A DNA stretch of 64,000 nucleotides from Mytilus californianus (taxonomy: Eukaryota): contig NW_026262668.1 of the NCBI RefSeq assembly GCF_021869535.1, positions 91,574,001 through 91,638,000 on the forward strand, written 5' to 3'. How positions within the stretch are numbered: position 1 is the first letter of the stretch; each line of letters starts with the position of its first letter. A program made the translations under genes and the position numbers. Shown in pieces: positions 4,591 through 32,283 of this stretch. Below the pieces are notes generated by a model, which did no database searches, was not told the origin of the DNA, and saw nothing but the letters and a program-made list of their open reading frames with translations.

Positions 4591-4596
4591 TTTATT
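4591..4596 (-). terminator. Candidate polyadenylation signal AATAAA of the beta-galactosidase
   Basis: tttatt on + strand about 146 nt beyond the stop; hexamer is common in AT-rich DNA. Confidence 0.3.
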
Positions 4597-4741
4597 ACAC
4601 AGAATTTTACCAACTTCCCATAAATAAGAGCTATTATAACATATTATACATAAATAAGAGTGCACAAAAAATATTAGTTGCCTTCTAACACTATCTCATC
4701 TGAATGTAAAAAATAATATATATCACATAATGAAGAATGAC

Positions 4742-11000: not shown

Positions 11001-14000
11001 AAATTCTGTTTAATGAACAGGCAAAGTCATATATGTGTATGTTCCTCACACACCACACATCAAATTTGAAAAAATGTGAACATTCGAATACAAATCATAA
11101 TTTCAACCTGTCAGTTGCTCCACACTTTATGAACATGGATTTAGAATACATGTACTACTTTAATAGCAATACAGGAGAGTGACTATTTTTTTTTATATTC
11201 CTTATACACTGGTTTTCTGGACAATGTTACAGTGCCATCCTTAGTTTTTTATTCATACCTGACCAAATGCTTGCATATAAACAGGATAGGTTGCAGTCAC
11301 TGGTTTCTGGCTTGGTTTTCTCAATTTATCCAGTAAATCCTGAACTGTTCCTGCCTGTTCAAAACGAAATCATTAAATCTTCTCAATGTTAAAATGATTA
11401 AAAACTTCAGATTTGCTTTATTTAAATATAAAATCAAGAACTGTCCATTTAGGGATTAGATATAGGTCAAAGGTAACCAAAAAAATGCTCTTGACTTGGT
11501 AATTGTCAATATTCACATGCTGTTTAAGTTTAATATAACCTCAAAGATTGAGTAAAGAAGCTACAGGATACAGGTACTAAAGTATGATTGATAAATATAA
11601 ACATAGCAAAAGCAGGAAACCATAGGGATGTTACATTGCATCAGTTTATTTGTATAAAATAAAATGCCTGATTTATATAGGATTAATTTCTATTATATAG
11701 AACATATAAAAAGCAAGAAAACAACTGAAGAAAATAAAAGATGAAGTACTAATGTAGCTACCATTTTGGATTCAAATCTTTTTAACATAGAATGCACATT
11801 GTACAAGTATATAAACACCAATCATATCTTACTTACAAACTTCATTTCAATTTTCCCATAAGCCATCTTTGGGGTATTAGCTGGAATAGGCATGGGTGGT
11901 GTTTTCACATACTGTGGAAATATAATCATACAAAATTTGAATGTTATGGTAAAAATTAGAATTAACAAATAATAAACTACAATATGTAACCTCTAAATCT
12001 GGAGAGTTATATAGAGCAGATATAGAATATTTGTAAACAGAAGCTGCTTGACAGTTGTCTTACAACCATAAATGAAACTAAGACTGCTATCAATAATACA
12101 TTTCAATTACCAATTAAACCCTGTTAAATGTCAATGCACCTGTCCAATGTCAGAAATTTCATCTGTAGTTGTTCTTGTTGCTTTATATTATATTTTTAAT
12201 GTTTTGGTTGATATAGTGGAGTGTTCTGTTTGTTAGTTTTCATGAACTTGTAGTTTTTAAAAATGCATTTTGGAGTTTTTTTTTTTTTATTACATTTTTT
12301 AAGTCTTTGAGAATTTGGTGTTGGTGTCAGATATTTGGTTATTTCTGTTGAATTTATGGAAGATTTAGTACTTACCATACCATGTCAGTGCTTGTCAAAT
12401 GTCGAAGGCTGAATGAATAGCATTAATTGTTTATCTAGCTTACTAGTATTTTTTTTCTCTCATTGCATTTACTCTACATCTCTCATATTCATTTTATTTT
12501 TCAGTTTTGTCTGTCAACTTTCTCACCTCAGTTTATCCCATATCTTTTTTATCCCTAGTCAGAATAATGTGTTTGAGTAAGATGACATGTCTTCCTGCGG
12601 ACTGTTACCTTGTGAACTAGTGTTAAAAATCTAACTTTGAATATTGGTCTAGTACAAAGCAAACTAACATGTTCTCGTTCTGAATATCCATTTAAATATA
12701 AAAGATGAACAGTCCTCATTAAAGTATTTCCTATCCCTGATCCTACCTTTGAAATGACTTGTCTGAGTGCCAAATATTTATCAGTTACATCCCCTGCTTC
12801 CGTCAATGGACCATCATAGTCATAACTTGTAGGTACTGGCAAGAATGCTGGGTAATTTGCTCCTACAATGTTAAAGTTAACATCCTTTCATAAAATATAC
12901 AGTTCACGTCAAGTACTTTTTGTATACCAAGTTAATCTGATGAATAATTTTCCTATATTGATGCTTTAACATGGACACTGTAGCTAAAAAGAATCAACTA
13001 CCATTTAAAAAAATTAACACATGTTAAATAGATGTACTATTCCTCAAATTGGAATATCAAAATTCAATTTTTTGTATAACTTTATTCACAGTATTAAATC
13101 AAATGATCTTAAAAGTATACCCCGGTTATTTTAACCAAACTTCAACTTAAGCAAGATTACATTTGTAGCTTGGTACATTTTCTTACCTTCCTTCTGGCAT
13201 ATTTTAAATTAAACTCAGTAAGAAAATTCCACATTTTTGAAGCACTTAATTGAAAGTGTCCCCATGCAAAAATCTCCACATTAAAAACTAAACAGGAATT
13301 TAACATGATATGAAATGTTTTTTCTCCTATAGATTTATGATATGAAATGTTTTTTCTCCTATAGATTTATCTTTGCAAGTTATCGAAGTCCAAGAATATC
13401 ACATTAAATTGGTTTAAATGCATGCAACATATCAAAAGTACAAATAAATCATACTTATATAGTCTGCCCCTGTGTCAAATTTGAAGCACAAAAATACATT
13501 AATGTTATTTTTTCATTGTAGATTTTGAATCAAATTAAAGATGGAATGAATGAATCTGACTAACATAAAAGTTAATAAATAGAGATCTTGCCAAAAATAT
13601 TTCATTTAGAAAGTCTATATAATTGTCCGCCATCATTTATTATTCTTTGATTAATACATTCAAAGTATTTGTGTTATTCATTTTTTTTTTAAGACATAAG
13701 TTAGCAATAAAAATGTTCAACGTATAAAACTGATTTTGCTTGCTTGTGTTGACTTACCATTCCAGTAGCCAAAGTTGGTGCCACCTTCAAACATATACCT
13801 TTAAAAACATAAGAAACAGTTGATTAATACAATTTCAAAAGCATTTATATTGTAATTCTTAAAAACTATTTCATTTAAATCCTAGATTTCAAAATCTTGG
13901 TTCTCTCTGGGCACTCCAGTTTCTTCCACCAATAAAAACTGGCCGCCATGAAATAGCCAATAATGCTGAAAATGGCATTAAGGTAGATGGGGGGTCTAAA

Positions 14001-17000
14001 TTAAAATCCATAGAATTTTTTAATAATTTGTCAAAATGTAGTTTATGTCATACTTTTTTCAAAAATATAATAAAAAGTATGGGTCACCGTGCTTTTTTTT
14101 ACGCTACAGCTTGTGCAAAACTGTCAGATTTTGTATAGATTATGCATGGAAAATCCAATTGTGTGTGATAAAAAGAAAATTACGCCATAGAATTTTAAGA
14201 TCAAATATGAGAAGATAGCTCTAATAATATGCTTTCAGATAAGAAAAAGAAAAAATGGGTTCACCGGACTCATTTTCTCGCTACATAATAAAATAGGTAA
14301 ATTCACAACACATTCTATTATAAAAGTTACTTTATCTGAGTTATGTTCCCTTATATCTGAGTTATCTACCCTTATGTGGCAAAGTTGGAAAAAAGTGAAT
14401 CAAACAAAAATATTCTGTTTTTTGTAAACTACAGCCGTAAATATGATAAAACACATAATTTTCTATATTAATATGACAAGTCTTACACATAAATTACATA
14501 CTACTCCCGAAATTTGCACATTTCATTAAAGATCTAGACCGATTGCTATATGCTATTTCAAAATCCAAGATGGAGGAAGACACCCTAGCTACCTTAAATA
14601 GCAAAAATCAAACAATCAAACTCTTCTTCCAATAGTAAAACCTAGCAGGTCAGTACTTGTATCTTACTAAAAAAATTTGAGACAATCATTACTTAGACTT
14701 ATAGCTGTCACCAAGTAAATCATTCATGATTGTAAGTTTCTAGGTTCTATAATTTGCAAAACATTAAATCATTGTATATATCTGTTTCTCTTCTTGTACT
14801 GTTGACAAGCTTCCTTAAAATTGCTTATTTGCAACATTTACAGACCATCATATTTAAGATGAGACTACTATAACAGTAGTCTCAGACTTATGTGATGATT
14901 CTGTTGATATTAATGTTTATTATCTAAGTCTACTCACATGTTGATATTAGCACCATAGGCTAGTAACACATCTAAACTCTTGGCAACAATATCTAAACCA
15001 GTGGTTGAATGTTTGAATCCCCAATGATCTAACCAACCAGTGTAAAACTCAGAGTTAACCTGTAGAACAAGGTAAAAAAAAACACAATTAGTTTGTTGAA
15101 AGATTTTTTCTGTAAATTAAAAAGTGTGTGTTTAAAGCATGCTCTGTACCACTTCTGAACTTTTAATTGCTTTGTTGTCCTTCATGTGTCCTTTTTTGGC
15201 AATAAATTAACTTTTTTAAATTGAATTTTATCTTCAGTATTAAAGTCATATGAAACTTAAAATTTAAAAAAAAAAATGAATATTTTTATATACTTGAATG
15301 GCTAAGTTTTTACTTCAAAACAAGTGTACCTGAACTTTCTTGTGAATGAAAATCATTTATATTATCAAATCTTCATAAATGTACTACTATTGAATTATTG
15401 ACTTCCTTATTCTAATTTGCCGATATTTTCCCGTATGCAGTAACCTAAACTATGAGATCTCTCGTTAGAACTTCAGCCACCGCACAGCTCAAGTTTGAGG
15501 GAAAAACCTTGATGACAGAATGTAAACAAATGTGGAATGGAAGATAAATAGTATTATTATATACTTAGTAGTATATACAGATAAATTGTATGTGTAATAC
15601 AATCATTGGCAAGCGTGCTGTATCAGCCACCCGTGATGATATCGATATCAGCACGGTTGCAAAGGCTTTATCACACCTTTAATCTGTATGACGTCACGTC
15701 ATCGATTGCAGTCACTGTTGCAAAGGCTTTATCAAACCCCTAATCTGTATGACGTCATGTCAAACCTCTATTCTGTATGACGTCATTTCAACCCTCCCCC
15801 CCCTCCCCCCCCCCCCCCCCCCCCCCCCCCCCTTTATCTGTATGATGTCATGTCACATTAAACACATCTACGTGAGGTATATGTATATAATAAAGTGTAT
15901 ATGATATAGCTTTTTCAATATCACACACCGTATCAACCCTCAACCAATATAATCCCTCGAGCAGAGCTCTTGGGATTATATTGCTGTCTCGGGTTGATAC
16001 GGATGTGATATTGGAAAAGCCATATGATATTCTCTATATAAATTATCCTTAAAGAACAAATCTGATACAACAAATCATTTAATAACTGTAACTCTGTTAA
16101 GGAAAAGTTTAGTTATGGGAACGCATGGAAAATATAAAAAGTTCTATCAAATCACTTATTTGTCACATGCTCCTCATGTTCTGTGTTGATTGTTTATCAA
16201 TGTCATGATCTGGTAAACTTCATCAATGTCATGATCCGGTAAACTTTGGCAATGAACTCGAAAGTTGATTAGCTTGCAATCAACAATCACTGAATGAAAT
16301 ATTATTTCTTGATAATACATTATAGATTCGTAATACATAACTATAAAAATCATGCGTACGACACTTAGTTTAGTATATATGCATGCATTGAAATAATTAT
16401 TTCAATAACATTAAAATTACAAGAAACTTGTTTCATATGACCTTAAAAATGATGAACTGTCTATTCTATAACTAAAGAAAGTTTTGCAAAAATATTATTT
16501 TCACCAACACCTAATGAACTAAACCATCTAACAATAGCATCATATCAAAAATTTAGAACATGTGTTAAGTGTGACTTCTGAACTTTGAAAAATCTATCTG
16601 TTGATGAATTCAAACCCCACACCACTACTTAACACCAAGATACCTTAAAATCTGAACATTAACATACAACACCTCAATTATCATCTTTGCACCATAAAAT
16701 ACAAGTCACAAGTCTTTTAACATCTTTTTGGCATATATCAAATAGTTCAATTTTTTTTTATGAAATTCAGTGGTAATATTGTTTTTACTTTGTATCATAT
16801 TACCTTTTTATACCTTGGTTAGCATCTCTACTATGACCTTTTAACCAGTTAAATGGGTCAATATCCCTAATGCACCACAAAATGAGGAAGACAACAATTA
16901 ATAGTAATAAAAAACCTCTATACAATGATATTGGACATAATGCTGTTCTTAATAATTGACTGAGCTTACCCATCATCATCATTTGTGTATTTTGAAGAGC

Positions 17001-20000
17001 AGAAGACAGAACAATAAAGATGTAAAAACTTTGGAGTTATCAAATTTTTGTAAAGAACTGAATTTCCAGAGAATTTAACTATAAGAAAAAAGAGACTTTT
17101 TACTCGCTGTAGCCACATCAAATCGGGCCTTTTGGAGTTTTCCAATTTCTGAAAAATCTTACCACACTTTGTACCCAGAAAATTTAACAACATTTGTGAA
17201 AATGTCTCAACTTCGAAACATTTCCAAGTTAATGATATGGATAGAAGAATGGATGAAAAGGCTACCAATGTCACCTTCCTGTAATGAAATCCACATATTG
17301 ACCAAACTGAGATCAGGGCATCTATTGGAGTGCATGTAGTTCATATCTAGATCCATTCTTTGATATGATTTAAGACACATATTTTTTTACTTTTACTATA
17401 TTAACAAGGTCTGACACACAGACTTTAGCAGGATTTTCTTGTTGTGTTGAAGACCCATTGGTGGCCTTGGGCTGTTTTCTGCTCTTTGGTCAGGTTGTTG
17501 TCTCTTTGACACATTCCCCGTTTCCATTGTCAATTTTATTTACAATCAAGTTATCAAACATACATTTAGTTTTTACTGTACATACCAAAGGCCCTTTAGG
17601 TTCCCAGTCTCTTTGTGGTTGAAATGCTTTCTTAGGATCCACTACAAAAACATAAAGTAACATTAAAATGTCTAATTAAACTCTAAGTAGTCTGATCTTT
17701 TATACATTCCCTTCACTTTCAACTTTTTTTTTCTAAAAATATACAACCAATTGGAATTCTTTATTAAAGTAAACCCGTCATCTTTGTCATTAAACTGTAT
17801 AGAAAATTGGGGCATGACAAATAAAATGCAGATTTTTTTATTTGTTTATTGGAAGAAAAGTATGTTCGAAATATAAAGAAATTTTATCATGTCTAGTATG
17901 AACAACAGTATAGTGATGGGACGGGCTGGAGATGCAGGTTTGGTTGACATTGCTTCTAATAATAGGGTTTTGAAATAGATCATTCAGATATATTGTATAC
18001 TGTAAAATACTGAGTTGCAAATCCAGAAAAAAAACATGGTGAGGTCCATACCACACTAGCACTACACTTTGGTGTGAAAATGGAGAATTTTTTTTAATGA
18101 ATTAATATTGTGAAGTGGTTTATTTTTAAAGAAACAAAAGTTTGCAATTTTTTAGGACCAAAGCTGTTCATGAGGTTTTTATTTACATGTGTTCTTTGTC
18201 CTTGCATCTGATTTTGCCTTTAGATCAAATTTACCCCAATGGTTATTCTTCATGGTTTTATTTAAGTAACCAAATTAATGCAAATAAATCCTTGAAGAAA
18301 TATCTAACATCACAGTATCACCCCTCAATTATCCAGTCATTGACCCCCCCCCCCCTTTTTTGATTCAAAAATTAGATTTACCACTATTTCTTACCCACTA
18401 GTTTTATTGAGATATGTAAATTAGCTTATGTATAAGTGCAAAAAATAACATGTTAAAGCTTAAGACAATAAAATAATAAAACTAGAACTATGTAAATAAG
18501 AAGATGCGGTATGAGTGCCTATGAGACAACTCTCCATCCAAGTCACAATGTATAAAAAGTTAACAATTATAGGTCAAAGTACAGCCTTCAATATATGTGG
18601 TTATTTTCTGTATATAATAAATATTTCAGGATTTAGAGATGATTAGGATGAGGAAGCTGTGAATTATGTGCAAAATTATAAAGCAGGCAGAAAATATTGA
18701 AGATTGGTAGATCAATTAAGGGAAAAACTTACTAGTAACCCCAAAATCAACCGTAGCATATACACCCTCTAGGTTACCACACTTAAGATAGCCATCACCA
18801 CTCCCGTCAGTGGTTATTAGAATAACCTCATGACCTAGATGGGCCAAAGCCTTTTCACGTAGATATCGTAGGTAATCATAATCACAAGCAAAATAACTGC
18901 CATATTCATTTTCAATCTGAAAAGCAGACCACAGAATATCATCATAGATAATCATACAAGAAATAAGAGGAAAAAACAAACACTATAAATCTGACAGCAC
19001 ACACTTGTACCTAAGTAAAAGAAAAACAGAAGCAATAAAACCTGCCTTAGCAACCATTTTCCTGGTTTTCATCTGTTTTTACTTTACACATGATTCTTTC
19101 AAGAGATTGATAGAAATCCACAAACAAGTATTCTGTATGACAGTTTGGTTTTCAGAAAGATTAAAAAGTATGAGTATAAATACAGCAGTTTCTATGATAG
19201 GAAATATAGAAGTGGAAAGACAATGTTGAAGTAAAATTCTTCAAGTTGTTAGTTTTAATATTTTACATATTGATTTGTATTTCTGCAATTCAAATGTTAT
19301 GTTTCTACGAAATAATGTTTTCTACAATATTTTAAAGGTACCTTGAATAAAATATGCTTTGTATTTGAACAAATTTGATTTTTTTATCCATCTGGGCTCT
19401 CGGTCATAAAACTTTACTCAGTACTCGGAGTACAAAATTTGTGCTCGAAACACCAAATCCATGATTTTGATTGGTTGATTTCTGTGTCTGAGTACGAAAA
19501 TCGTGCTCGAAAGTTTTATGACCGCAAGGCCAGGAAACTAATTGCCTCCAGATTTTTACCAGGAAAAATTACATGTAGGTGTTACTGTACACTAATTGAA
19601 ATTAAATTGTGTACTAAATTACAGAAAAGTGTTTAATATTTATAATCTGAGGAAACATAATAAATTAATATAATGAAATAAAGCAAGCTGTGAAAGTACA
19701 GAAATGTTTTAGCCAATTTGTTGTGAGCGGTGTTATCAACAGATTAATTCAGGTAAATGATTGCCATATACAAATACATGTAATTGTGTTATTAGTTTTT
19801 AAAAAAAAGTTCTCCATTACATAGTATGCTTCTCATATTTTCTTCAAATATTCTACCAAGGAATTGACTATTGATTTAACATTTACAACTAAGCTGTTCG
19901 GTATTAATCAAACGAAAATTAAAAGCACCATTTTTGTGTGATTTGAATTACCAAAAGAAAAAAAAAAACTAAAAAAGCAACCATGCATACAGTTTTTCTT

Positions 20001-23000
20001 TTCATAATTTGTTTCTGACTTCGTTTTAGAAAGTTAGATATGTAAATTCAATATCAAATTTTATTTGGATTTTTGTTGGATTATTTTTTTATTAACTAGC
20101 ATAGAAAGTTCTATTAAATGATTATTAAATTTGCTATATGTGTAAATATGAATGAGAAACATACAATGCACATGTACACTATTGATAAAACTAGTTCCTA
20201 TAAAAACAACGTAAAACGCAATTGTTTCAAGGATATATATTCTTTCCATTTTTTGTCACTTCAGATCAGAAGTTAAATTTTTAAATTATACAATTTTTAA
20301 ATCTACACCTATGAAATATTCTTATTGCAAAGATAACATATTGAGATCAAACAGATAGAATCTATATCTAAAACAATTGCAAACAAATTGGCTATTTAAA
20401 GCTGCTGCAACAGTTGTCTCCACTTACAAGTAGGATGAAAATCTATTGTGGCATATACTCCTTCAATAGTGCCACACTTTAACTCAGGGCTGTCATGGTT
20501 ACCATCTGTGGTAAATATAACAGCATTTTTGCCTAAAAGTGAAAATGCTTTATTCCTCAGATGTCTAATATAGTCATGATCACAGTATCCCCCTGTTCTC
20601 TTATAACTACCATATTCATTTTCTATCTGAAAAATAATGTTCTTCTGTTATATCAGTTCTTTTTCTATGCTGAAAAAAAAGAATGATAATATTGTGTGGA
20701 TATAAACTGTTTGATACTGGTGTTAAATTCTTCTGTAGAATTTAAATGCAGTCACTAAAACGATAAAACATTCAAGTCATAATGTAGCTGACACTATAGC
20801 TATATATATGTGCATAATGAAATATTTGGCTGGTTTTGTTTAAGGCTTCAATAGATCAAATACAGTATTAAACAGTGTCTTTAAGAATAAAGTCAGTTGT
20901 GATAATATTTTTCTTCCTGTTTTGAACAAAGCAACCAGGTCAGCGTTTCTTCACAAAGAAAATGAGATGTGGGGTACCATGAGACAGCAACCAAATGACA
21001 AAAATAACCAAAAGAAATCTAGAGGGCAACATACAGTCTATAACAATAGACGAGTGTCTATACAGTTTGTCAGCTCTATTCTTTTGTGTAATTTTAAAAG
21101 GACAAGTATTATTAACAAGACACCACACGCTGAAATGTCTCGCCTGCTTTACTGACCATTGATTTTATTTTGAAAGTCTTAAAGATAAAGGTTTTACTAC
21201 AAGTATCACATAAACTTAACATTTTTACAGATCCATGACAATGAGGTCAAGGTCAGATAAAAACTGTCACACAGACATGTACACCTTACAATTATTCCAT
21301 ATATCAAATATAGTTGGCCCATTGCTTATGGTAACTGAAAAACAGGCCAAAACACAAAAACTTAATGTTAACCAATGAACCATGGAAATGAGGTCATGGT
21401 CAGATGAAACCTGCCAGACTGACATGTACCCTTACAATCATTCCATACACCACATATAGTTGACCTACTGCTTATAGTATCTGAGAAACGGACCTAATCA
21501 TGTGACTTTAACCTGAATCACTAGTCCATGAAATGATGTTGAGGTCAGGTTAACCATGTCTGACAGACATGTAGACATTGCAAGGAACCCATATACCAAA
21601 TATTGTTATCCTATTACTCATATTATTGGAGAAATTCACATGACAAAAAAAATATAATTTTTTTTCTCAAGTAGTTGCTGAACCATGAAAATGAGGTCAA
21701 GGACAATGGACATATGACAGACAGAAACTATAACATGAGGTATCTGCATACAAGGTATGAAGCATCCAGGTCTTCTTTCTTCTGAAATATAAAGCTTTAT
21801 ATAAGTAGTTTACAACGACGCCACCATCACAGCCTGAGCGGGATGGTAATCCCTATGTCTCGCATACTGCAACTTTCATCACAGACAAGACAAAAACCAT
21901 GCAACAGATGATTGGTCTCCAAAGAAAACTTTTTAGCTAACAAAATATAATAATGGGAAGATAATACATAATTTAAAAGTAAAAATTTCAAACCAAAACT
22001 TTAATATGACCTATAGTGTTCATGAAAATCAATATTATTTCAACTACTGTAAGTTCAGAAATTTTTGCATACATCTATTATTGTGATTTTTGAACAATTG
22101 ACAAAAATTTGAGATTAATTATCGCAATTACAGAGAATGGTGCATCCAAATAATGCTATAATGATTTAAAAAGTGATTTTTTTTTAGTTTTGCAAAATCT
22201 ATTCATCGCAATTTTCACTACAATATAATCATTGCAAAAATTTCTGAATTTAGTATTTTACAGTATTTGATTGCATTTGTAAGTGTCTTCATCTATTTAG
22301 TCATCTTAATAATAAGATTTTTCATAAAATTTCCATTAAAATAAGATCTGTATGAATTCTAGAAAGACTTATTAGTGAATTTGAAATACTAAAACAGACA
22401 CAACATTTTTGTGACAGCAAATATAAATATTACATACCTGAACCATTAACACTGGCCCACCATTTATGTACAGCAAAGGCTTTAACATTGGATACAACAC
22501 CTCTAACCACTTGTCAACATACTTGATATAGGCTAGTAAATTGAAAATGTAAGCATTTTATTCATTAAATAAATATTTTAAAAAATTAGAAATTATTGAG
22601 TAGATGCTTATATTGAACAAAATTCTACGGAAATGCATTTTTCAATCGTTCATAAAATGAAAAGTCTGCAGAAAAAAAGATAAAAGAAATATATGTTGAC
22701 TGTTATTTCTATTTTATCTTTTTTCTTTTAGTCATTATGTTGGTTTTTTTTTCAATGGTTTATATTTCCCCATTGGTATCAACTTACTTTTTCTTGTGAG
22801 AATTGTGAAGCTTTTACATACTTTTAAAAGTCTTAAAATTATTAACTTCAGTTATATACACTGCAAATTTTCTAGTAATTCTAAAGTGATTCATGGACTT
22901 TATTCAAGTTTTAAAAATCTTTTATACTAGGAATAATTGATAACAGAATTTAAAATTGCTGTGTCTGGCTTTTGTAATTTTTTTTGCTTGGAAGAAAATC

Positions 23001-24361
23001 TAACCTCAGTACAAAATGTAGGTACAACTTACTTGAATCCATGGTGCGGAATACTGTATTAGGGTTCTTGGCTAATATGTATGGAGGAAATCCACCCTGA
23101 AATATATTACAGTTCATTACAGCATATTCAAAGTATCATGTACTGTTTTCCTGTTATACTGAGACTATAGAACTAGGTCAAGTAATATTACATATAACTC
23201 AACTAACAAATGTACAGTGTAATCACACTACAAATTATTGGCATTAGATTCAACTTTAACAGTAATTTACAAATTGACCTCTGACATTGCAACATCTTTA
23301 TCTGAATTATCTTTACTTGTAGTAATTGTGAAAACAATCTAATACAAAGCAAATAAAGTCAACAAATAGACCAATGAAAATGAGATTTTTAAGCCAGGTG
23401 ACCTCTTTCAGACATGATTCCTTAAACCAAAAAAAAAAAAACGTTGACCTATACTTTTACAGAGAAACTTGTTAAAATGATAAAAACTAAACATGGATCA
23501 TTAAACAATAATAAAAGAAATCAAAGCCTAGTAACCTCGATAAAATAAATGGATTGGTGTCTTCATCTTACAATGATTATCAGAAAAAAGATCCAGCTAA
23601 AAGTGTAATTACTTACAAAGTCCCACTCTCCACAGATATAGGGCCCTGCTCTAAGTATTACAAACAAGTCAACTTCCTGTGCCTGCTTTATGAATCCAAC
23701 TAAATCCTTGTCTCCTTCAAAATTTAACTTGTTCTCTTCCATCTGATGGAAATTCCAAGGTACATATCTGAAAGTAACAAATTATTTCACCTTCTTTGCT
23801 CAGAAATCTGTATAATTTGCTAAAATTCAATGAGCAAGTATTTTGTTCATATGCTAATTGTTTTCAAATTAATAAGGCGATACAAAGGGGCAATTCACAT
23901 CATAAGTCAAATAAACACAGATAACACCTTACCTAAATTAAAGGTAATGGTACCAAGATATTTTTTGGTAATCATTTAAATCTTAGACTAGTTTCAATAT
24001 GCAATGATATCATCAATTCTAACATCCTGTCCTAATCTTCAATGTTAAGCTGAACCAATGATTCCCTTTGTAATAAGTATAGCAGATGATCACTATCAGC
24101 ACACTTCATACTTGTTTCTAGATTGAATAGATAAATTTTGGTAATTTATTTGGAAAACTTGGTAAATATACATCCTAAAGTCTAATGGACTACCTACACT
24201 TGTATGGCATTCAAGCCAGCAGCTCTCATTTTCTGTAATCTGTCTTTCCAGTAATACGAAGGTATCCTGCTATAATGTATACTGCCAGAGACATAGCGGA
24301 AAGGTTTTCCATCCATACGGAACATGTTGTTATCATAATCAATTGTAAATGTTCTGTTTGC
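4742..24361 (-). CDS. GLB1: Beta-galactosidase, glycoside hydrolase family 35 (GLB1-like); span of traced coding exons 2-17, first coding exon unresolved
   Basis: Hand-spliced exons sum to 1920 nt (639 aa + stop) with exon 6b or 1935 nt with 6a. Motifs [32 protein letters not shown] (acid/base Glu), NSEFYTGW (nucleophile Glu), [35 protein letters not shown]. Exon boundaries match those known for vertebrate GLB1. Confidence 0.96.
5614..5734 (-). CDS. GLB1: GLB1-like exon 16 (TGTPYYSK...[13 protein letters not shown])
   Basis: ttttcag|T ... AAG|gtaatt, 121 nt, phase 2 to 0. Confidence 0.93.
5783..6250 (-). mobile_element. HINE-like element with poly-C tract (6058-6083)
   Basis: End hairpin tgcgccatgagcgca shared with 8158 element; accact...agtggt hairpin at the other end. 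Confidence 0.55.
7606..7709 (-). CDS. GLB1: GLB1-like exon 15 ([20 protein letters not shown]...)
   Basis: ctacag|GGA ... AG|gtacat, 104 nt, phase 0 to 2. Confidence 0.93.
8158..8726 (-). mobile_element. Complete HINE-like element with about 3 internal ~125-bp tandem units; same family 5' part at 54108-54400 (+)
   Basis: 5' tttttatacgcccgtt..gacgtat sub-TIR/hairpin, (gtcc)-type microsatellite, 3' caggcgtat sub-TIR plus hairpin. Confidence 0.7.
9154..9294 (-). CDS. GLB1: GLB1-like exon 14 (VPVGLV...[22 protein letters not shown])
   Basis: ttttag|GTT ... AAG|gtatat, 141 nt, phase 0 to 0. Confidence 0.95.
9559..10593. mobile_element. Non-autonomous TIR DNA transposon (hAT- or P-type), copy 1
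   Basis: Termini caagggaccgaaa / ttccggatccttg; perfect 8-bp TSD attatgtt (9551-9558, 10594-10601); near-identical copy at 57770-58830. Confidence 0.9.
10714..10821 (-). CDS. GLB1: GLB1-like exon 13 (YQGYALYRH...[12 protein letters not shown])
   Basis: ttttcag|TAT ... CAG|gtatga, 108 nt, phase 0 to 0. Confidence 0.93.
11259..11354 (-). CDS. GLB1: GLB1-like exon 12 ([10 protein letters not shown]...[10 protein letters not shown])
   Basis: gaacag|GCA ... CAG|gtatga, 96 nt, phase 0 to 0. Confidence 0.9.
11837..11911 (-). CDS. GLB1: GLB1-like exon 11 ([25 protein letters not shown])
   Basis: ccacag|TAT ... TTT|gtaagt, 75 nt, phase 0 to 0. Confidence 0.92.
12747..12862 (-). CDS. GLB1: GLB1-like exon 10 ([38 protein letters not shown])
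   Basis: ttgtag|GA ... AAG|gtagga, 116 nt, phase 1 to 0. Confidence 0.95.
13758..13798 (-). CDS. GLB1: GLB1-like exon 9 ([13 protein letters not shown])
   Basis: tttaaag|G ... G|gtaagt, 41 nt, phase 2 to 1. Confidence 0.94.
13982..14593. mobile_element. TTAA-TSD MITE with GG...CC termini (Kolobok-type), inserted in a tRNA-SINE-like fragment (13899-13981, 14598-14630)
   Basis: ttaa|ggtagatggggggtct ... agacaccctagctacc|ttaa imperfect TIR. Confidence 0.75.
14938..15059 (-). CDS. GLB1: GLB1-like exon 8, nucleophile exon ([14 protein letters not shown]...GANIN)
   Basis: ctacag|GTT ... AT|gtgagt, 122 nt, phase 0 to 2. Confidence 0.96.
15555..16040. repeat. Dispersed repeat with internal ctgtatgacgtca units, C-tract (15792-15832) and terminal palindrome
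   Basis: Four (t/a)atctgtatga(c/t)gtca units; aatataatccc..gggattatatt and ccgtatcaaccc..gggttgatacgg inverted repeats. Confidence 0.55.
17586..17641 (-). CDS. GLB1: GLB1-like exon 7 ([18 protein letters not shown])
   Basis: tttgtag|TG ... TTG|gtatgt, 56 nt, phase 1 to 0; EPKGPL motif. Confidence 0.93.
18733..18916 (-). CDS. GLB1: GLB1-like exon 6b, canonical catalytic exon ([61 protein letters not shown])
   Basis: cttttcag|ATT ... A|gtaagt, 184 nt, phase 0 to 1; within ORF 18716-18979. Confidence 0.95.
20428..20626 (-). CDS. GLB1: GLB1-like exon 6a, divergent duplicate of the catalytic exon ([66 protein letters not shown])
   Basis: tttttcag|ATA ... T|gtaagt, 199 nt, phase 0 to 1, no stops; not in the ORF track because it lacks a start codon. 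Confidence 0.88.
21117..21895 (-). mobile_element. HINE-like element with repeated catga..atgaggtcaaggtca units
   Basis: atgtctcgc sub-TIR at both ends, internal ~135-bp degenerate repeats. Confidence 0.6.
22047..22263. mobile_element. TA-flanked MITE (Tc1/mariner-type); related copy about 63413-63601
   Basis: ta|ctgtaagttcagaaatttttgca ... tgcaaaaatttctgaattt...acag|ta. Confidence 0.6.
22438..22532 (-). CDS. GLB1: GLB1-like exon 5 ([31 protein letters not shown])
   Basis: tactag|CC ... CAG|gtatgt, 95 nt, phase 1 to 0. Confidence 0.95.
23033..23096 (-). CDS. GLB1: GLB1-like exon 4 ([21 protein letters not shown])
   Basis: tttcag|GGT ... A|gtaagt, 64 nt, phase 0 to 1. Confidence 0.94.
23617..23767 (-). 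CDS. GLB1: GLB1-like exon 3 (YVPWNFH...[12 protein letters not shown])
   Basis: tttcag|A ... TTT|gtaagt, 151 nt, phase 2 to 0. Confidence 0.96.
24198..24361 (-). CDS. GLB1: GLB1-like exon 2 ([54 protein letters not shown])
   Basis: tcttcag|GCA acceptor, GT|gtaggt donor, 164 nt, phase 0 to 2. Confidence 0.95.
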
Positions 24362-24769
24362 CTGAAGATAAAGAAAACTATTAACTCATTTCATAAGCAA
24401 ATAGCTTTTCCCTATTTGACTATGTACAATGGTTGCAGTATTGATTGGTTCGAAAGACACCTTAAAGTCTTGACGGTTTACTCATGAGAACTAAACATAC
24501 CTGCCAACCTCTGGAAGTAAAGATTCAGGTTTTAACTGCATTGAATAATAAAATATCTGCAGGGTCAAAATGTGTTTAAAAAATGGTGGCTCCTGAACGT
24601 GAATATTCTCTAGAACAGGACAATGGATAAAAAAACCTTCAAATTATGTATGCAGCCTATAAAAATATCTTTTAATATCTTTTAATGTGTTTAGTAATTG
24701 TTTTTTTTCCAAAAAAATTATTTTCAATTCTCTCAGAAATATTGATAATAAGCATGTGGGTAAGATTTT

Positions 24770-26395
24770 GAAGGTTGAATGAATACTTTATTTGCAAGAA
24801 GCATATACATGCTATGGCAAATGAAAAAATATGTACAATATATGACAAACAAAAGACAGCAGAGAACAGTAGTTACAAAGTATACAATAATATTATGACA
24901 ATATAGGTGATCTAATTTTCCAAGCTGCATTTAAATAGTTGCATAGTTTTACTGTCAGAGATTTACAATGAGCTTGTAATAAATTATCTAACTTGTACCG
25001 ATTTGACCAAGAATAATAAATTTTAGGTAAAAATTCTAATCGCACAGATCTATATGCTGGACATGATAAAACAAAATGATATTCGTCCTCTAAAACATTC
25101 ATATTGCAACATATACAAATTCTATTTTCTCTTTGAGTATTTAGATAACGACCAACTTCAACATTTAATTTAAGTGTGCCGCTACACAATTTAGTTAATA
25201 TCGATACATTACAATGGAAATCTAGGTATTTTTCAACACCAAATACTAGTTTATATCGTTTATAAATACATAATTTGTTACACTCTTCTAAAGCTGTATT
25301 CCAGCTTTGTAAAAAATGATCTTTAATACGTGTTTTAACACAATCAAATGATAATTTACTAGTATCTTGTGAAATCCATACATCATTAAATCCAAGGTTA
25401 CATAACAAATTTTTGACGTTAGACGCCCAATTAATTTTACCATTATTTGCATCTTCGTACAAAAGTTTATAAACTTCATATACAATATCAGGTTTATTAG
25501 TTACAATATGAATCCAATATTTCAGGATTTTAAATTTTCTCAAAATATGCAATGGCAAATGCCCAAGTTCACCATATAAAAAATTTGTAGGGACTTTCTT
25601 GCCAAGTTTCAAAACAAATCTACAAAATCTATTATGTATAAGCTCTATATCACCAGCACGATGAAAACCCCATATTTCAGCCCCATAACTTAAAACGGAT
25701 CCAACCATACTATCAAATAGAAAAATCTGTTGTTCAGTAGTCAGATACAATTGTTTCAAAGAATTTATTTGTGAAGACAACGCTCTTGATCCTTACTGAG
25801 ATAAACGCTTTTGAGTTTGCAAAAATTTTCCATTATAGTGGAGCAACACACCGAGGTATACATAGGAGTGGAGCAACACACCGAGGTATACATAGGAGTT
25901 CACAATTTCTAATTCTCTGTCATTGTAATAAAAACGGTTTACCACAGGCCTCCATCCATTTCGAAAAACAATAACCTTTGTCTTCTCCGTGTTCACTTCT
26001 ATGTTCCATTTATTACAATATAATAGTAATTTATCAAGTAAATGCTGCAACACATTCGGTGATTTTCCAAAAAGTACAGTATCATCAGCAAATAAGATCA
26101 AATATATTAAAAATCCACTTAAAGACACAATGTTATTATCTGATTCAACAGAAATATCTTGAATAATGTTGTTAATAAAAAACAAAAACAGCAGAGGAGA
26201 TAGAGGTTCCCCTTGTTTAACACCAAGAAAATTATCAAACGCATCTGACAGCACTCCTCCGGATCATACACGAAGACGCACTGAAGAATATAAAGTTTTA
26301 ACAATAGATACAAATTTATTACTTATGCCATTATTTAGCAGTTTGTATATTAAAATTCTTCTGTGTAGCTTATCAAAATATTAGAATATAACCTC
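24770..26395 (-). mobile_element. 5'-truncated CR1/L2-group (Crack/Daphne-like) LINE: RT domain plus C-terminal CCHC
   Basis: FDKLHR, GVKQGEPLSPLLF, LFADD, YVYLGV, C-x2-C..EDEYHFVLSC motifs; one reading frame from about 26390 to 24893 broken only by two nonsense codons; 3' tail aataaagtattcattcaaccttc. Confidence 0.92.
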
Positions 26396-27067
26396 TTTGA
26401 TATCAGGACACAGGTAGTCAAATTAGGACAAGTTCCACCAACAAACAGGTTCAAGAAATGAAGCATACAGGTAGAGTGTGTCATTAATAATCATGAAGGA
26501 AGTGTTTTATAAGTGTATGTATAACTGTGGATCTTTTCTAGTTGTGTTCTTTGTCCTTTCAGAGTAAATTCACAAGTGTAATAATTCCATGACAACTGTT
26601 CTCTAGGACTTTATTTTTGACGGAATAACAACACACTAGTGTGAAGACGATATATTATACTAGTACACTTTGACATTTTGTAGTGCAGAAAATCTACACA
26701 TCTGAATAAAAGAATGCTTTAACATAAAATTAAAAACTTATGGCTACTAAATTCTGCCTCAAATAGAAAGGAAAATACTATGAACACAAACATTGATATG
26801 AAAAAATATGTCCCTGACTGCTCTTCTTCATCATTTGTTCATATGATTTATTTCAGCCAGTTGTTTTAGAATTTTGTAAACAAATTTAAACAGGCAATAT
26901 ACTTCTACAGGTAGAGACAACATGGTATGGGATGAAATCTTTTAAATATTTTACAGGTTGAACATGAAATGATCCTACCTGACCACTTTAGAAGTGAAAC
27001 ATTTCAATTTCAAAATTTTATTAACTCATGGAGGGGCAGAACATGTCACTGCAATGCATACTCCTAA

Positions 27068-28616
27068 CAGGGATGGGGTAATCGTAATCTGTAATCGTAA
27101 TCGATTGTAATTGATTACATTTTCCCCAGTAATCGACAGTAATGTGTAATCGAAGACATTTTCGATTACATGTAATCGTAATTTAATCGATTACGGCAAA
27201 AATTATGATGTAATCATCGATTACTTTTCGATTACATTTCGATTACTTTGAGATATAACCTATTTTAAATAAAAATATGTATGTACATGATGTATTCATC
27301 ACTTTATAGTACAGATAAAATAGAATGTATTACATTGTAATATGACTTAAGAGTTTATCAACTGCCTTATTTCTATCTATTATCTCAAGCTGCATTATAA
27401 TCAACTAGATCCCCTACCAAATTTTACTTGATATTTAGGTTTTGAAACAAATGAACTTATGTGCTTGTCAATAATTCAAGACCTTTTATATTAAAATATG
27501 AAAATAGATTTAAGTTAAGAAATGAGTCTTAAGTTAATATCTGTTCTACATTAAAGTAGTAAGCTTATTTGTATTAAAATTGCTTTAGGCATAATTTTCA
27601 ATAAGAGTTGGAATTTTAGCTTTGAATAGATAAACAGTAACTGTTGATCTTACAATGTTATGATAAAAAAAGTTAAGAAAGTACACCAAATCCTTTTGAC
27701 AATGAACCAATGGGTATGCATCGAAATTCTTTTTTTCAGATATAGATACATGTATCCCTTTTTGACACAATAAATATATATTGTTTATAATTTGATTAGA
27801 GAATAAAAAATTTAACAAACTTCTTGTCTTTACTAATCAGAAGTTCAGACTTCTAATCAATAAGATGCAGACTTTGTTTTCATTTCAATTATGTCTAATT
27901 AAGAAGGAGATTTACATTATTTTTCCCCAGGTTATAAATTGTACTCCATTGACAGTTTTATAACCTGTAATTAGGGTGGTTATCCAAACATAAGGATTAA
28001 TTCATTTATGTCATTATAACTATAATTTCAATCTTTAAAATTTGCTGAACTAATTAATTATTCTATGGTTTTAAATTTTTTTTCAAAGGAAACTTACAAC
28101 ATTTTAATCATCTATGTTAAAATATACCTGTTTTAACAAGTATAAACAAAAAAGCTAACTTAAGTAAGAATGAAAGCAAATTTTTGAAAAAACTTACAAT
28201 ATAAATAACTGATTGATGCAATGCGATGTCATCTCTTATTTATCTTGACAGCCAAAATTTCAAGAAATTTTGAATATTTCTGACCTTCAGTATGATATTC
28301 CATCTAGAAAACAACTGTGAACTTAAAATTTGGTAACAATGCTTTAAATGCTGTTTTAGTAAAGTTCTAAATTTCGACTATAAAAAACGTTGAGCAACAT
28401 AATTGTGTATAACTTACTTTATTATTTTTTTTTGTAATTTTGTAGCATGTAATTGACAGTAATCGAAAAGTAATGTAATTACTTTTGATAAAGTAATCGA
28501 TTGCAATCGATTACAAACAAAAATTAGAGTAATCGATTATTAATCGATTACACAAAAATCCTTCATGTAATCGATTATTAATCGATTACATATGTCAGTA
28601 ATCGTGCCCATCCCTG
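27068..28616. mobile_element. Non-autonomous hAT element, 1549 bp
   Basis: TIR cagggatggg / cccatccctg; perfect 8-bp TSD actcctaa (27060-27067, 28617-28624); subterminal GTAATC/GATTAC arrays. Confidence 0.92.
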
Positions 28617-29997
28617 ACTCCTAACATCTATTTTATTCATTTATATGTTCTGCTTAATTTCAAAGAATTGATTTATAAACAGTGCTACAACAGATTGCTT
28701 AGCTATTTTTTATGTTTTTGTTGTCTGATTATTTTTTCATGCTTAGGATTTATGTTTTGCATGCATGTCATGTCTTCTCAATGACAATATATTAATTGTT
28801 TTATGTTAATATTTGCCAATGTCAATAATATAGCTCAGTAGAAGGTGTACTTTCTATGTATAATCATATATGTAATAGCTATTATATCTATGGCATAATG
28901 TTGTAAACATGTTCTACTTCAAAAACGCTTTTTTTATTGGTATTTTGTACACACAAACATAATGTGGATTATTTTTCTTTTAAAAGGGGATTACACACAG
29001 TACAATATTTTTAAAATAAAACTAGAGGCTCTAAAGAGCCAGTGTTGCTCACCTAGTTCTATATGCATATTCATCAATGGACACTTCTCCAACATTTGAG
29101 ACTAGAATATTCTTCAAGACTAAAATCTCTTTTGTTGAATCTGTATTGCAGATCATATTTTCTGTTTAAAGTTTCTATCTTCAATAGGTATTATCCAAAA
29201 AACAAAAAAGTGTTAAAACTGTCTTGAGAGCAATAAATCCAATAAAACAGACCTGCCAACTATCCTGATTTTGGCGGTATCATCCCCATTTTCATTCCTC
29301 AATCAGAATCCCTATATCAGGATCGTAAAACAAGTCAAAATCCAGATTTTCACAAAATCTACCCACAAAAATTGTTGGTTACCGATTTTGAAGTTTTTCT
29401 GATCAATTTCTATAAATCTATAATTTTACCTGGCAACATATTTATGACAAGTTTACGACCCCAAGTTAATCAATGGTCACAACAGGTGTCATAATCTGTC
29501 GTTACAGGTAATCTACTTATCCGATGGGTCATAATGATCCTCAAAATTAATTAATTTGTAAATAGAATCGGTCAGTTGACATTTCAATTTTAATCAATTT
29601 ATCATGCGATCACAATTTGCAACGTTTACCGTAGTATCATGACAAAAGCGTAATTAACTGAAAGACGAAAACTGTAATGAACTCATTATGAAACATCGCT
29701 TATCTTGAAATCTGTGAAAATTTTTGTAATCAGACGTGTTTCTGTCCAGTTTTGATTTAAAATCGACACCATATTGTATTCACTTCTACTATGTATAAGC
29801 CACAGCCGGTAGGAGCACCTTTGAATACCAAGAAAGGGGGGGTCTTCATTTTGTATCCTTTATTTTATTAGGCTATTTTTCTCTATTCTTAAGTTATTTT
29901 GCCAATTAATAAGTACAAGAATCATGCAAATAAAAGAAATCAAGGCTTGTTAGCTCATCATCAGTCTACCAAAAGAAAAAAAAAGAAGAATTAAAAA

Positions 29998-32283
29998 TCA
30001 TTTGTTCAGAGAACAATTGAAGGTCTTTCCACCCGAAACGATATATTTTGATGTGAAAAATATTAAAACTCGGTTAGAAATGTAATTTTCAGTGTCAAAT
30101 GATAGCTTATTATACGCTGAATTTAAAAATATATGGTTTCTAAACATTTTTGTTTGAAATATGGGGAATAATTTGTTACTTCCGGTTTGAAAAAGGTCAC
30201 TTCCGGTATCATTTGATAGTTTACTTGACACTGATTCCAAAAATATATGGTTCTATGTACTTTAACATTAAATATGGACAAGAAATAGCTACTTCCGGTT
30301 TACAAAAGGTCATTTCCGGTTGATTTTTTCAAGGTCATATGGCTTGCAACTTAATGCACAAAGTACCATAGCTTTATCAGGCATACATTAAAAGTTAAAG
30401 CAAAGGTCAAAATCTAGAACGTCAAATCAAACTTTGACCTTGACCCTAATTTCAAGGTCATGAAACAAGGGCCTCAAATCAAAACACTCTAGGTCTCTAC
30501 TATATATTGTTAATGAGTTATATTACCATACAGCTGATATTAGATATAAAAGGGGCGAAAACTCCCATTAAATGTCTATGTACCCTTTAAACTAAAATTT
30601 ACGTGTTACGACATGTCGCAACTAACAATTCTGTAAAAATATTTTGTCGATATTGTGTACAATCTCTGAAAATAAGAGATACAACATGTAACAAGCCAAA
30701 ATCAAAATTTAGAATATGACCTTGACCTTTGACCTTGACCTTACAGGCCTCTACAATAACTTTTTTTTCAACTTGTCCAGTAGGACAAGTACATACCAAA
30801 ACTTACTTGTCCGAATGAAATTGTAACTTGTCCAAAAAAAAAATCTTAATAATAACCTTTTTTGCAATTTAAGTTGATTGAATTAAAACAATAGAACAGA
30901 ATTTGATTTTAACATATATTTTGCAATACTTTTAAAAAATATAAGTCGTGAAGAACTTAATCTAGTAATGTCACAGGACTTAGGTTCTAGTTTTCATCAA
31001 TGCCAAAGTCTCATCAGACTCTGCACATGAGGCACCATCTGATAGGATTGCCAATGTACACTCGTTGGATTTGTATCCTGTTTTTTTAAGTTGAAAAAAG
31101 TTTATTCAAATGCAATCAATAAAAAAAAGAAGATGAGGTATGATTGCCAATGAGACAACTCTCTGCAAGAGATCAAATGACACAGAAATTAATAACTATA
31201 GGTCACCGTATTGCAAGTACTAGTACTGTTTTTTTCTACATATGATCAAATATGATTTAGTGAATTTTATGGTAAATAATTTCGTTATTTTTATTTAAAA
31301 AATATTTTTGTTAAAAAAATAACCGGTATGGTATTTATTATAAAGCAACAGAATAAGGTAGGAAAACGAGGTACTGATTTGTCTTGGTCCCAAAATGTCT
31401 CCTGCGTTACCAAACTGTCTATTAATTATGTCTATTAAATATGTCTCCTACGGTGCCAAACTGTCTATTAAACTTGGAAGGAATCGCTTCCGAGCTGGTG
31501 ACGAACTGTCTTGTAAAGTTACCTCATCTATAAAGGCAGGATCAGTAAGACTGGTTTCCGAGAACCTGTTAAAAAGTACCTGACAAAGAACCAGTTTTAA
31601 ATTATCGATTGCAAGTAAACATGTCAAATTAATACTTGTTTTTATCTTCTTTTCTTGATTTTTGTTTATAATTACTTTGTTCATCAAAGTTGGATTAAAT
31701 TTATTTTCTGCAGAATAATTTTACTTGTCCCGTCGGACAAGCTTGATATAGCTTTTACTTGTCCGACCTTTTTTTCCTCTGGTACCGGACAATCGGACAA
31801 GCGTTATTGTCGAGCCCTGCCTTATTTTCTTTTTTTGAACCGAGGACCTCAAATCAAAAGACTTCAGGTCTCTATAAGTTATGGTTTTTTAGTTACAAAT
31901 GCACATCATTTATATCAAATGCATAAGGGGAAATAACTCTCATATGGAGTCTCTGGATAGCTTCAGTCAAAATTAATCAAATCATTCTGAGGATATAATG
32001 AGCAATTTGGTAAAATAAATTAGTCGGTTTCTTATGCGGTTGCTACGTATAAGTAATAACAAGAAAAACAGTGTTCAGGGAGATAACTCTTATATGGGAA
32101 AGTATTCGGTTACGCGGTGTCAGTTTCAAAAGCGTATTAAACTGTTCAATATCATATACCATATGTCTAAGCGACATCTTACGAAACAAAAAAACAGCAA
32201 AGTAAAAAAATTAGGCGGAAGAAAAAAAATAATAATCAGAACAAAACCAATAGGTCTTTCCACGGAAAAGTGGAAAGACCTAA
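29998..32283 (-). mobile_element. HINE-like element (ggtctttcca sub-TIRs), split by the 30744-31819 insertion
   Basis: Hairpin taggtctttccacggaaaagtggaaagaccta at 32250-32283; ggtctttcca plus hairpin at 29998-30032; internal gaccttga repeats. Confidence 0.7.
30744..31819. mobile_element. TIR element with 5-bp TSD (hAT5-like)
   Basis: caggcctctacaataac / gttattgtcgagccctg 17-bp TIR (2 mismatches); cctta duplicated on both sides; removal restores gaccttgaccttattttc. Confidence 0.75.

What the first reader, a model, noticed from the sequence alone, without database searches (positions are those of the whole stretch)
18733..20626. Tandemly duplicated catalytic exon in beta-galactosidase: mutually exclusive active-site cassettes
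Seen: two homologous exons, 6a (20428-20626, 199 nt) and 6b (18733-18916, 184 nt), sit between single-copy exons 5 and 7. Both have AG/GTAAGT sites, enter in phase 0, exit in phase 1 and contain no stop. Including both or neither shifts the frame, so only either/or splicing gives full-length enzyme. By hand alignment they share about 37/66 residues, clustered on ENEYGSY, CD, TTDG, LKCG, EGVYAT and DF, while the flanking introns show no visible similarity; this suggests an old duplication under purifying selection. Established: this exon carries the GH35 acid/base Glu (human GLB1 E188) and both cysteines of the C195-C230 disulfide, and both copies keep all three. 6b is the canonical form (SYFACD, DFG). 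6a has a 4-residue insertion just after the catalytic motif ([10 protein letters not shown]) and DFG changed to DFH. Inference: one locus encodes two beta-galactosidases with different active-site loops, possibly differing in aglycone specificity, pH optimum or tissue (for example digestive gland versus housekeeping lysosomal). I do not recall mutually exclusive catalytic exons being described for GH35 genes.
Basis: partly seen in the sequence, partly recalled or inferred. Interest (0 to 1): 0.9.

Follow-up and report, generated by a model that had tools for sequence, protein, structure and literature searches.

The report
Alternative catalytic exons in mussel beta-galactosidase
A mussel lysosomal-type beta-galactosidase gene carries two tandem copies of the exon that holds its acid/base catalytic residue, and public RNA data show that each mRNA uses one copy or the other, giving two enzyme forms with different loops beside the active site; RefSeq already lists both forms, but I found no paper that describes them.

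Summary

- **Exons:** 6a (20428-20626) and 6b (18733-18916) lie on the minus strand. They are homologous, stop-free, AG/GTAAGT-bounded and both 1 mod 3 in length. Their flanking introns are no more alike than shuffled sequence.
- **Transcripts:** Two assembled mRNA contigs from public RNA-seq of a closely related mussel map as 5-6a-7 and as 5-6b-7. Neither carries both exons.
- **Reads:** RNA unitigs laid on the window stop exactly at the predicted exon ends. Stranded raw reads cover both exons at similar depth.
- **Identity:** The two spliced window models translate 100% identically to Mytilus californianus RefSeq beta-galactosidase-like isoforms X1 (666 aa, 6a) and X2 (661 aa, 6b).
- **Frame:** Including both exons or neither gives an early stop codon.
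- **Conservation:** The pair occurs in at least seven mussel species or contigs. dN/dS is 0.07 for 6b and 0.07-0.36 for 6a.
- **Oysters:** Oysters have an analogous pair, which a short exon tree suggests arose independently.

The differences fall in the two loops after strands beta4 and beta5, beside the acid/base Glu. Whether the two enzymes differ in function is untested.

This is a real, conserved case of a well-known mechanism. Databases annotate it automatically.

The parts
3613..32796 (-). Whole GLB1-like (GH35) beta-galactosidase gene. It has 17 exon positions, 16 of them used per mRNA. The coding sequence ends at 4745 and the 3' UTR runs to about 3613.
   Evidence: Two mRNA contigs were mapped to the window and refined to GT-AG boundaries. 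The translations are identical to M. californianus XP_052091799.1 and XP_052091800.1.
22438..22532 (-). Constitutive exon 5. It ends in phase 0 (...GGPVLMVQ).
20428..20626 (-). Alternative exon 6a (199 nt, 66 aa). It is the divergent form, with 4 extra residues after the catalytic motif, 1 extra residue after TTDG, and DFH in place of DFG.
20615..20617 (-). Codon of the acid/base Glu in exon 6a (E184 of isoform X1; human E188).
   Evidence: It is an invariant column. Its role in human GLB1 comes from PMC7504770.
18917..20427 (-). Intron of 1511 nt between 6a and 6b. It holds a high-copy interspersed repeat at about 19320-19530.
18733..18916 (-). Alternative exon 6b (184 nt, 61 aa), the canonical form.
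18905..18907 (-). Codon of the acid/base Glu in exon 6b.
17586..17641 (-). Constitutive exon 7 (56 nt). It enters in phase 1. Its first two bases complete a Leu codon after 6a and a Met codon after 6b.

Best explanation
The window carries the single-copy GLB1-like (GH35) beta-galactosidase gene of a Mytilus mussel. Its protein products are identical to M. californianus RefSeq models. An old tandem duplication of the exon that encodes the end of strand beta4 (with the acid/base Glu), helix alpha4, strand beta5, the following loop and strand beta6 produced exons 6a and 6b.

Each mature mRNA contains exactly one of the two, giving isoform X1 (666 aa, 6a) or X2 (661 aa, 6b). At the protein level, exclusivity is enforced by the reading frame. 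Each exon is 1 mod 3, so including both or neither creates an early stop codon far upstream of the last junction. I infer that such transcripts are removed by nonsense-mediated decay. Any further control at the splicing step is unknown.

The isoforms keep every catalytic and disulfide residue. They differ mainly in the two loops on the catalytic face of the TIM barrel, after beta4 and after beta5. I infer that they are two active beta-galactosidases that differ in substrate (aglycone) preference, pH or stability profile, or place of action.

Shown: the exon pair, its use in RNA, its conservation and its purifying selection. Inferred: nonsense-mediated decay, and any functional difference.
For: - **Exon structure:**
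- **Homology:** the exons are clearly homologous but the introns are not (z 12.5 against -0.3 and 0.9).
- **Full-length mRNAs:** contig L012 maps 5 -> 6a -> 7 with no 6b. Contig L013 maps 5 -> 6b -> 7 with no 6a.
- **Unitigs in run X1:** a 257-nt unitig (depth 15.2) covers exactly 20428-20626 and a 242-nt unitig (depth 20) covers exactly 18733-18916. Each carries 28 unlaid letters on the exon-5 side and 30 on the exon-7 side. That is what a k=31 bubble between shared exons 5 and 7 should give, because 6a and 6b share only their first 2 bases and differ in the last one.
- **Stranded raw reads (run X21):** depth is about 3.8x on 6a, 3.9x on 6b and 5.2x on exon 5, all in the orientation of a minus-strand RNA.
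- **Breadth of expression:** 6a is held by at least 20 RNA runs from at least 10 studies.
- **Match to RefSeq:** the window models are 100% identical to isoforms X1 and X2.
- **Frame:** including both exons gives a 247-aa ORF and including neither gives 208 aa.
- **Conservation:** the 6a+6b arrangement is present in L001/L002 and L008, and 6a is present in L007. All have intact splice sites and lengths of 1 mod 3. Only the exons align across these species. dN/dS is 0.07 for 6b and 0.07-0.36 for 6a.
- **Other annotations:** isoform pairs differing by 5 aa are annotated in M. edulis, M. trossulus, M. galloprovincialis and M. coruscus.
- **Structure:** both isoforms give confident AF2 models (pLDDT 87.8). 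The X1 model matches human GLB1 at TM 0.94. The two length differences (insertions in 6a) sit directly after strands E176-183 and E216-221.
Against: - No junction-read counts could be read.
- The full-length mRNA contigs come from a congener, 93-100% identical per exon, not provably from the window's own species.
- Tissue or condition specificity is unknown.
- No conserved intronic pairing elements were found.
- 6a replaces a Gly that is at least 90% conserved in the family (DFG to DFH), and its loops are modelled with low confidence. Reduced or altered activity of X1 therefore cannot be excluded.
- No enzymatic data exist.
Confidence: 0.92

Rival explanations
1. Exon 6a is a decaying or unused duplicate (pseudo-exon), and only 6b makes enzyme.
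For: 6a evolves faster than 6b: dN/dS reaches 0.36 against 0.07 and its branches in the tree are longer. It changes the near-invariant Gly of DFG. Its loops are modelled at low confidence. One run (X3) shows 6b sequence but no 6a.
Against: 6a is spliced at its exact boundaries in RNA, at depths comparable to 6b. It lies in a full-length mRNA contig. At least 20 RNA runs hold it. It is intact with conserved splice sites in four or more mussel lineages whose introns are no longer alignable. dN/dS stays well under 1.
Confidence: 0.03
2. The two copies are an assembly artefact, a merge of two paralogues or haplotypes.
For: None found.
Against: The same order, exon 5 then 6a then 6b, appears in independent metagenome and Logan contigs of other species (L001, L002, L008). 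It also appears in several independent genome annotations. The copies are only 65% identical, with unrelated introns. All other exons are single-copy.
Confidence: 0.01
3. Both isoforms are made but are functionally equivalent, so the pair persists without specialisation (neutral alternative splicing).
For: No functional data exist. All catalytic residues are shared. Usage looks roughly equal in two runs.
Against: Both copies have stayed under purifying selection past saturation of synonymous sites. The 6a-specific features (longer loops, the NHxxPEL motif) are conserved across mussel lineages. An analogous pair is kept throughout oysters.
Confidence: 0.15

Closest known systems
Tandem duplicated exon substitution (mutually exclusive homologous exons), as surveyed for human genes in PMC9741552 and PMC8373072; PKM exons 9/10 are a further example, recalled from memory
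   Same: Two adjacent homologous exons of the same phase, exactly one per mRNA. The isoforms are identical except for one homologous segment. Both copies are old and under purifying selection.
   Different: The gene family (GH35 glycosidase) and the clade (bivalves) are not among the described cases I could find. The swapped segment includes the acid/base catalytic residue itself.
Human GLB1 (lysosomal beta-galactosidase, PDB 3THC) and its alternative splicing to elastin-binding protein (PMC2631023)
   Same: Orthologous fold and catalytic residues: TM 0.94 and 48% identity. The homologous exon 6 is also the target of alternative splicing in human.
   Different: In human, exons 3, 4 and 6 are skipped and exon 5 is read in a different frame, giving the non-enzymatic elastin-binding protein (abstract of PMC2631023). 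Here exon 6 is swapped for a homologous copy and the full enzyme is kept.
Oyster beta-galactosidase isoforms X1/X3 versus X2/X4 (Magallana gigas, Crassostrea angulata, Saccostrea, Ostrea edulis; RefSeq)
   Same: The same exon is duplicated in tandem and used alternatively. The isoforms differ by 2 aa in length and the upstream copy is the more divergent one.
   Different: The oyster copies lack the 4-residue insertion. An exon tree rejects a common clade of mussel 6a and oyster 6a (AU p = 0.027), while within-lineage sister pairs are not rejected. This suggests separate origins.
NALCN alternative selectivity-filter exons (PMC3557258)
   Same: From the paper's title, NALCN channels have alternative forms of their functional core, the selectivity filter. 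The paper surfaced in my search for 'mutually exclusive' and 'exon duplication'; I did not read it.
   Different: It is an ion channel, not an enzyme, and there is no homology.

Membership tests
GH35 beta-galactosidase (GLB1-like) | Glyco_hydro_35 TIM-barrel catalytic domain followed by beta-sandwich domains | tested here: met
   PF01301, PF21317 and PF21467 hit the mRNA-encoded product. AF2 model of X1 vs human GLB1: TM 0.94, 48% identity.
GH35 beta-galactosidase (GLB1-like) | Acid/base Glu in the ENEYG motif (human E188), with the adjacent Asn | tested here: met
   Present in both 6a and 6b. N183 and E184 are invariant columns. The role of these residues comes from PMC7504770.
GH35 beta-galactosidase (GLB1-like) | Nucleophile Glu (human E268) | tested here: met
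   Invariant E269 (X1) / E264 (X2) in the SEFY motif of exon 8.
GH35 beta-galactosidase (GLB1-like) | Beta-galactosidase activity of each isoform | not testable with these tools
   Needs recombinant enzyme.
Mutually exclusive tandem-duplicated exons | Adjacent homologous exons with the same phase and compatible length | tested here: met
   Lengths 199 and 184 nt, both 1 mod 3. Exon alignment z 12.5.
Mutually exclusive tandem-duplicated exons | Mature transcripts contain one copy only | tested here: met
   L012 is 5-6a-7 and L013 is 5-6b-7. The unitig flanks are those of a bubble between exons 5 and 7. RefSeq X1 and X2 are identical to the window models. Rare transcripts with both or neither could not be counted.
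Mutually exclusive tandem-duplicated exons | Both copies conserved under purifying selection in related species | tested here: met
Mutually exclusive tandem-duplicated exons | A defined mechanism that enforces exclusivity (competing RNA pairing, steric hindrance or distant branch point, incompatible spliceosomes, or frame plus nonsense-mediated decay) | tested here: inconclusive
   Frame disruption is shown for both exons in and for neither in. Both exons have U2-type GT-AG sites. The intervening intron is 1511 nt, so simple steric hindrance is unlikely. No conserved intronic elements were found. The only inverted repeats found are short, most of them A+T-rich, and could not be tested.

The most novel reading that the evidence does not exclude
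The same catalytic exon of the GLB1-like gene was duplicated independently in mussels and in oysters. In both lineages it was fixed as a mutually exclusive pair, because swapping the loops after strands beta4 and beta5 yields two beta-galactosidases with different substrate range or compartment, for example digestive versus housekeeping lysosomal. That would be convergent evolution of an active-site cassette by splicing. Scallops instead carry three separate GLB1-like genes.
Probability: 0.3. Interest if true: 0.6.

Novelty: new member of a known kind. Interest (0 to 1): 0.45.

Why it matters
Mutually exclusive homologous exons are among the few alternative-splicing events whose protein products are generally accepted as functional. 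Here the swapped segment holds the acid/base residue and two loops on the catalytic face of a glycosidase, so one gene probably encodes two enzymes with different properties.

The pair is conserved across mussels, and oysters carry an analogous and possibly independent pair. That makes it a tractable natural experiment on how active-site loops tune GH35 specificity, and on splicing versus gene duplication as routes to enzyme diversification.

There is also a practical point for annotation. Several deposited bivalve gene models wrongly read both copies in tandem.

Tried and rejected
1. **Junction counts.** The 5-6a, 6a-7, 5-6b and 6b-7 junction rows were not shown. I used exact contig boundaries, flank arithmetic and mRNA contigs instead.
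2. **Short RNA fragments of the window's species.** Searching the protein database with 6a alone or with a 224-aa partial transcript found none.
3. **Docking/selector RNA pairing.**
   - Introns do not align to the more distant mussels.
   - The inverted repeats in the region are short, mostly A+T-rich and untestable.
   - No claim is made.
4. **Dating the duplication with an exon tree.** With 61 columns the deep nodes are unresolved. Only the monophyly of each copy within mussels and within oysters has support, together with a marginal AU rejection of a mussel-6a plus oyster-6a clade.
5. **Is the 6-residue SY...C loop of 6a an ancient type?** Similar loop lengths occur in scattered animal GH35 proteins. 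The tree gives no support for common descent with them.
6. **Identifying the samples.** Paper searches for the run and protein accessions found nothing.
7. **Two other contigs.** L010 has a gastropod-like exon 6 and L011 one like that of the freshwater mussel Sinanodonta. Each has a single exon 6 between exons 5 and 7, so the duplication is not general in molluscs.
Full report
**1. Observation**

On the minus strand, 20428-20626 (199 nt) and 18733-18916 (184 nt) each follow a pyrimidine tract plus AG and are followed by GTAAGT. They translate without a stop to 66 and 61 residues. Both begin IENEYGSY and contain TTDG, KCG, EGVYAT and DF.

Exon 5 ends at 22438 in phase 0 and exon 7 begins at 17641. 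The exons are 64.7% identical in DNA and 61% in protein. Their alignment score is 12.5 SD above shuffles. The 200 nt of intron on either side score at chance.

6b aligns to human GLB1 at about residues 186-245 (E = 7e-22). Human Glu188 is the acid/base, Glu268 the nucleophile, and Asn187 binds the 2-OH (PMC7504770). The Cys195-Cys230 disulfide is from my memory of the UniProt entry. Both cysteines are invariant columns in a 56-sequence family alignment, and both exons keep them.

**2. Gene and organism**

tblastn with GH35 proteins shows one gene on the minus strand in which only exon 6 is present twice. I mapped two mRNA contigs and refined the boundaries to GT-AG, which gives 17 exon positions between 32796 and 3613.

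The two spliced window models translate to proteins that are 100% identical to Mytilus californianus XP_052091799.1 (isoform X1, 666 aa, 6a) and XP_052091800.1 (isoform X2, 661 aa, 6b). The window is therefore from that species or something indistinguishable from it at this locus.

**3. Is 6a used, and is use either/or?**

- **Full-length mRNA contigs.** Logan contig L012 (2025 nt, run SRR13891812) maps exon 5 -> 20626-20428 -> 17641 and onward, without 6b. Logan contig L013 (3157 nt, run SRR13891796) maps exon 5 -> 18916-18733 -> 17641 and onward, without 6a. Both are 93-100% identical to the window exon by exon, so they come from a close relative.
- **Unitigs laid on the window.**
  - RNA run X1 holds a 257-nt unitig (depth 15.2) lying exactly on 20428-20626.
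  - It also holds a 242-nt unitig (depth 20) lying exactly on 18733-18916.
  - Each has 28 further letters on the exon-5 side and 30 on the exon-7 side that do not continue into the intron.
  - Because 6a and 6b share only their first two bases and differ in their last, 28 and 30 are the flank lengths expected for a k=31 bubble whose two arms start in exon 5 and rejoin in exon 7.
  - The flank letters themselves were not shown, so this step is an inference.
- **Run X4.** It shows a 1550-nt contig through 6b (depth 13.6) and a partial 6a contig (depth 5.9).
- **Stranded raw reads (run X21).** They cover 6a at about 3.8x, 6b at about 3.9x and exon 5 at about 5.2x, all in the orientation expected for a minus-strand RNA (the depths are my arithmetic on the bins).
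- **Breadth.** At least 20 RNA or RNA-like runs from at least 10 studies hold exon 6a.

The junction table itself was unusable, because high-copy intronic repeats filled it.

**4. Reading frame**

Including both exons gives a stop one codon into 6b, for a 247-aa ORF. Including neither gives a 208-aa ORF. In both cases the stop lies about 0.9-1.2 kb of mRNA upstream of the last junction. Those are the conditions for nonsense-mediated decay, which I infer but did not test.

**5. Conservation**

- Metagenome contigs from another mussel show exon 5, a 6a-type exon (190 nt) and a 6b exon (184 nt) in the same order (L001, L002).
- A Logan contig of a third species has 6a (199 nt) and 6b (184 nt) 597 nt apart (L008).
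- A fourth contig (L007) has 6a, and its 6a peptide is identical to the M. galloprovincialis isoform.
- All these exons have AG and GT[AG]AGT sites and lengths of 1 mod 3.
- A 775-nt transcript contig of the L001 species joins exon 5, the 6a-type exon and exon 7 directly (P0159).
- Only the exons align between the window and L001 or L008.
- dN/dS is 0.07 for 6b orthologues and 0.07-0.36 for 6a orthologues. Synonymous sites between 6a and 6b are saturated.
- In an exon tree, 6a forms a clade across the mussels (91/90) and 6b forms one in 91% of bootstrap trees. The duplication therefore predates these lineages.
- In the L001 species the 5' half of 6a resembles 6b much more closely (19/27 identical, against 11/30 in Mytilus). 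This is compatible with partial gene conversion.

**6. Already annotated**

Isoform pairs that differ by exactly 5 aa exist for M. edulis, M. trossulus and M. galloprovincialis (RefSeq), and for M. coruscus and M. edulis (community annotations).

Oysters (Magallana gigas, C. angulata, Saccostrea echinata, S. cucullata, Ostrea edulis) have an analogous pair that differs by 2 aa. The pair appears as PREDICTED Crassostrea gigas RefSeq isoforms X1, X3 and X4 in a third-party collection (eukprot), so it is not new to RefSeq.

The scallop and Mya arenaria isoforms I examined carry the same exon 6. Scallops instead have three separate paralogues about 60-66% identical to each other. Two further mollusc contigs have one exon 6 between exons 5 and 7.

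AU tests reject a clade of mussel 6a with oyster 6a (p = 0.027). They do not reject 6a+6b sister pairs within mussels (p = 0.53) or within oysters (p = 0.32). Independent duplications are therefore favoured, on only 61 columns.

Full-text searches found no paper describing alternative catalytic exons in GH35 or in bivalve GLB1.

**7. Structure and likely consequence**

AF2 models of both isoforms are confident (mean pLDDT 87.8; pTM 0.90 and 0.88). The X1 model superposes on human GLB1 at TM 0.94.

Exon 6 encodes, in order: the end of beta4 (E176-183, with the acid/base Glu184 immediately after it), a loop, helix alpha4, strand beta5, a second loop and strand beta6. The two length differences fall in the loops directly after beta4 and beta5, which is the catalytic face of a TIM barrel. 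These loops are modelled at pLDDT 84-94 in X2. In X1 they drop to 59-69 and 62, and below 50 for residues 190-193.

6a also changes the Gly of DFG, which is at least 90% conserved. It is H in Mytilus, R in the L001 species and R in Ostrea 6a. All catalytic residues are retained.

I therefore infer two active enzymes with different properties around the aglycone side of the pocket. Which property differs cannot be told from sequence.

**8. Verdict**

This is a real and conserved mutually exclusive exon pair in a GH35 gene. The mechanism is of a well-known kind. Genome annotation pipelines have already produced the isoforms, but the case seems undescribed in the literature I could search. The likely independent recurrence in oysters adds some interest.

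Noticed in passing
Proteins P0339 (M. edulis CAG2247378), P0341 (M. coruscus CAC5406777), P0001, P0351 and P0353 (Magallana gigas UniProt entries): Several deposited bivalve gene models read both exon-6 copies in tandem, either through a read-through bridge or through a shifted donor. This gives proteins with a duplicated catalytic segment. They look like annotation errors caused by the mutually exclusive pair.
   Followed up: partly
window 17350-17546, 18335-18728, 19320-19530, 21093-21880: These intronic segments reach depths of thousands to hundreds of thousands in RNA contigs of every run, on both strands, with many variant letters. They are high-copy interspersed repeats. The one at 19392-19533 has 24-nt terminal inverted arms and looks MITE-like. 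They swamped the junction table.
   Followed up: partly
window 25793-26254 (-), inside intron 1 of the gene: An ORF fragment matches reverse transcriptase RVT_1 (E = 2e-16). The adjacent 295-aa ORF at 24893-25780 has no Pfam hit. This is probably a retroelement remnant.
   Followed up: partly
Scallop proteins P0221, P0222, P0233, P0142, P0223, P0364: Scallops carry three GLB1-like paralogues. In Mizuhopecten all three lie on the same contig, in Ylistrum two share a contig, and one Pecten model fuses two of them. By eye, the TTDG...CG loop of two paralogues mirrors the oyster 6a/6b difference. The tree neither supports nor rejects a link (AU p = 0.235).
   Followed up: partly
Proteins P0034 (locus L010), P0046, P0073: These gastropod-like exon-6 ORFs share their first half and even the first intron-encoded residues, but differ in the TTDG...CG loop. 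They could be another exon or gene duplication in an unidentified mollusc. L010 itself shows only one exon 6.
   Followed up: no
L001 787-975 compared with window 20428-20626: In the metagenome-derived mussel, the 6a-type exon is 190 nt and has a 1-residue rather than a 4-residue insertion. Its 5' half resembles 6b, which suggests partial gene conversion between the two exons.
   Followed up: partly
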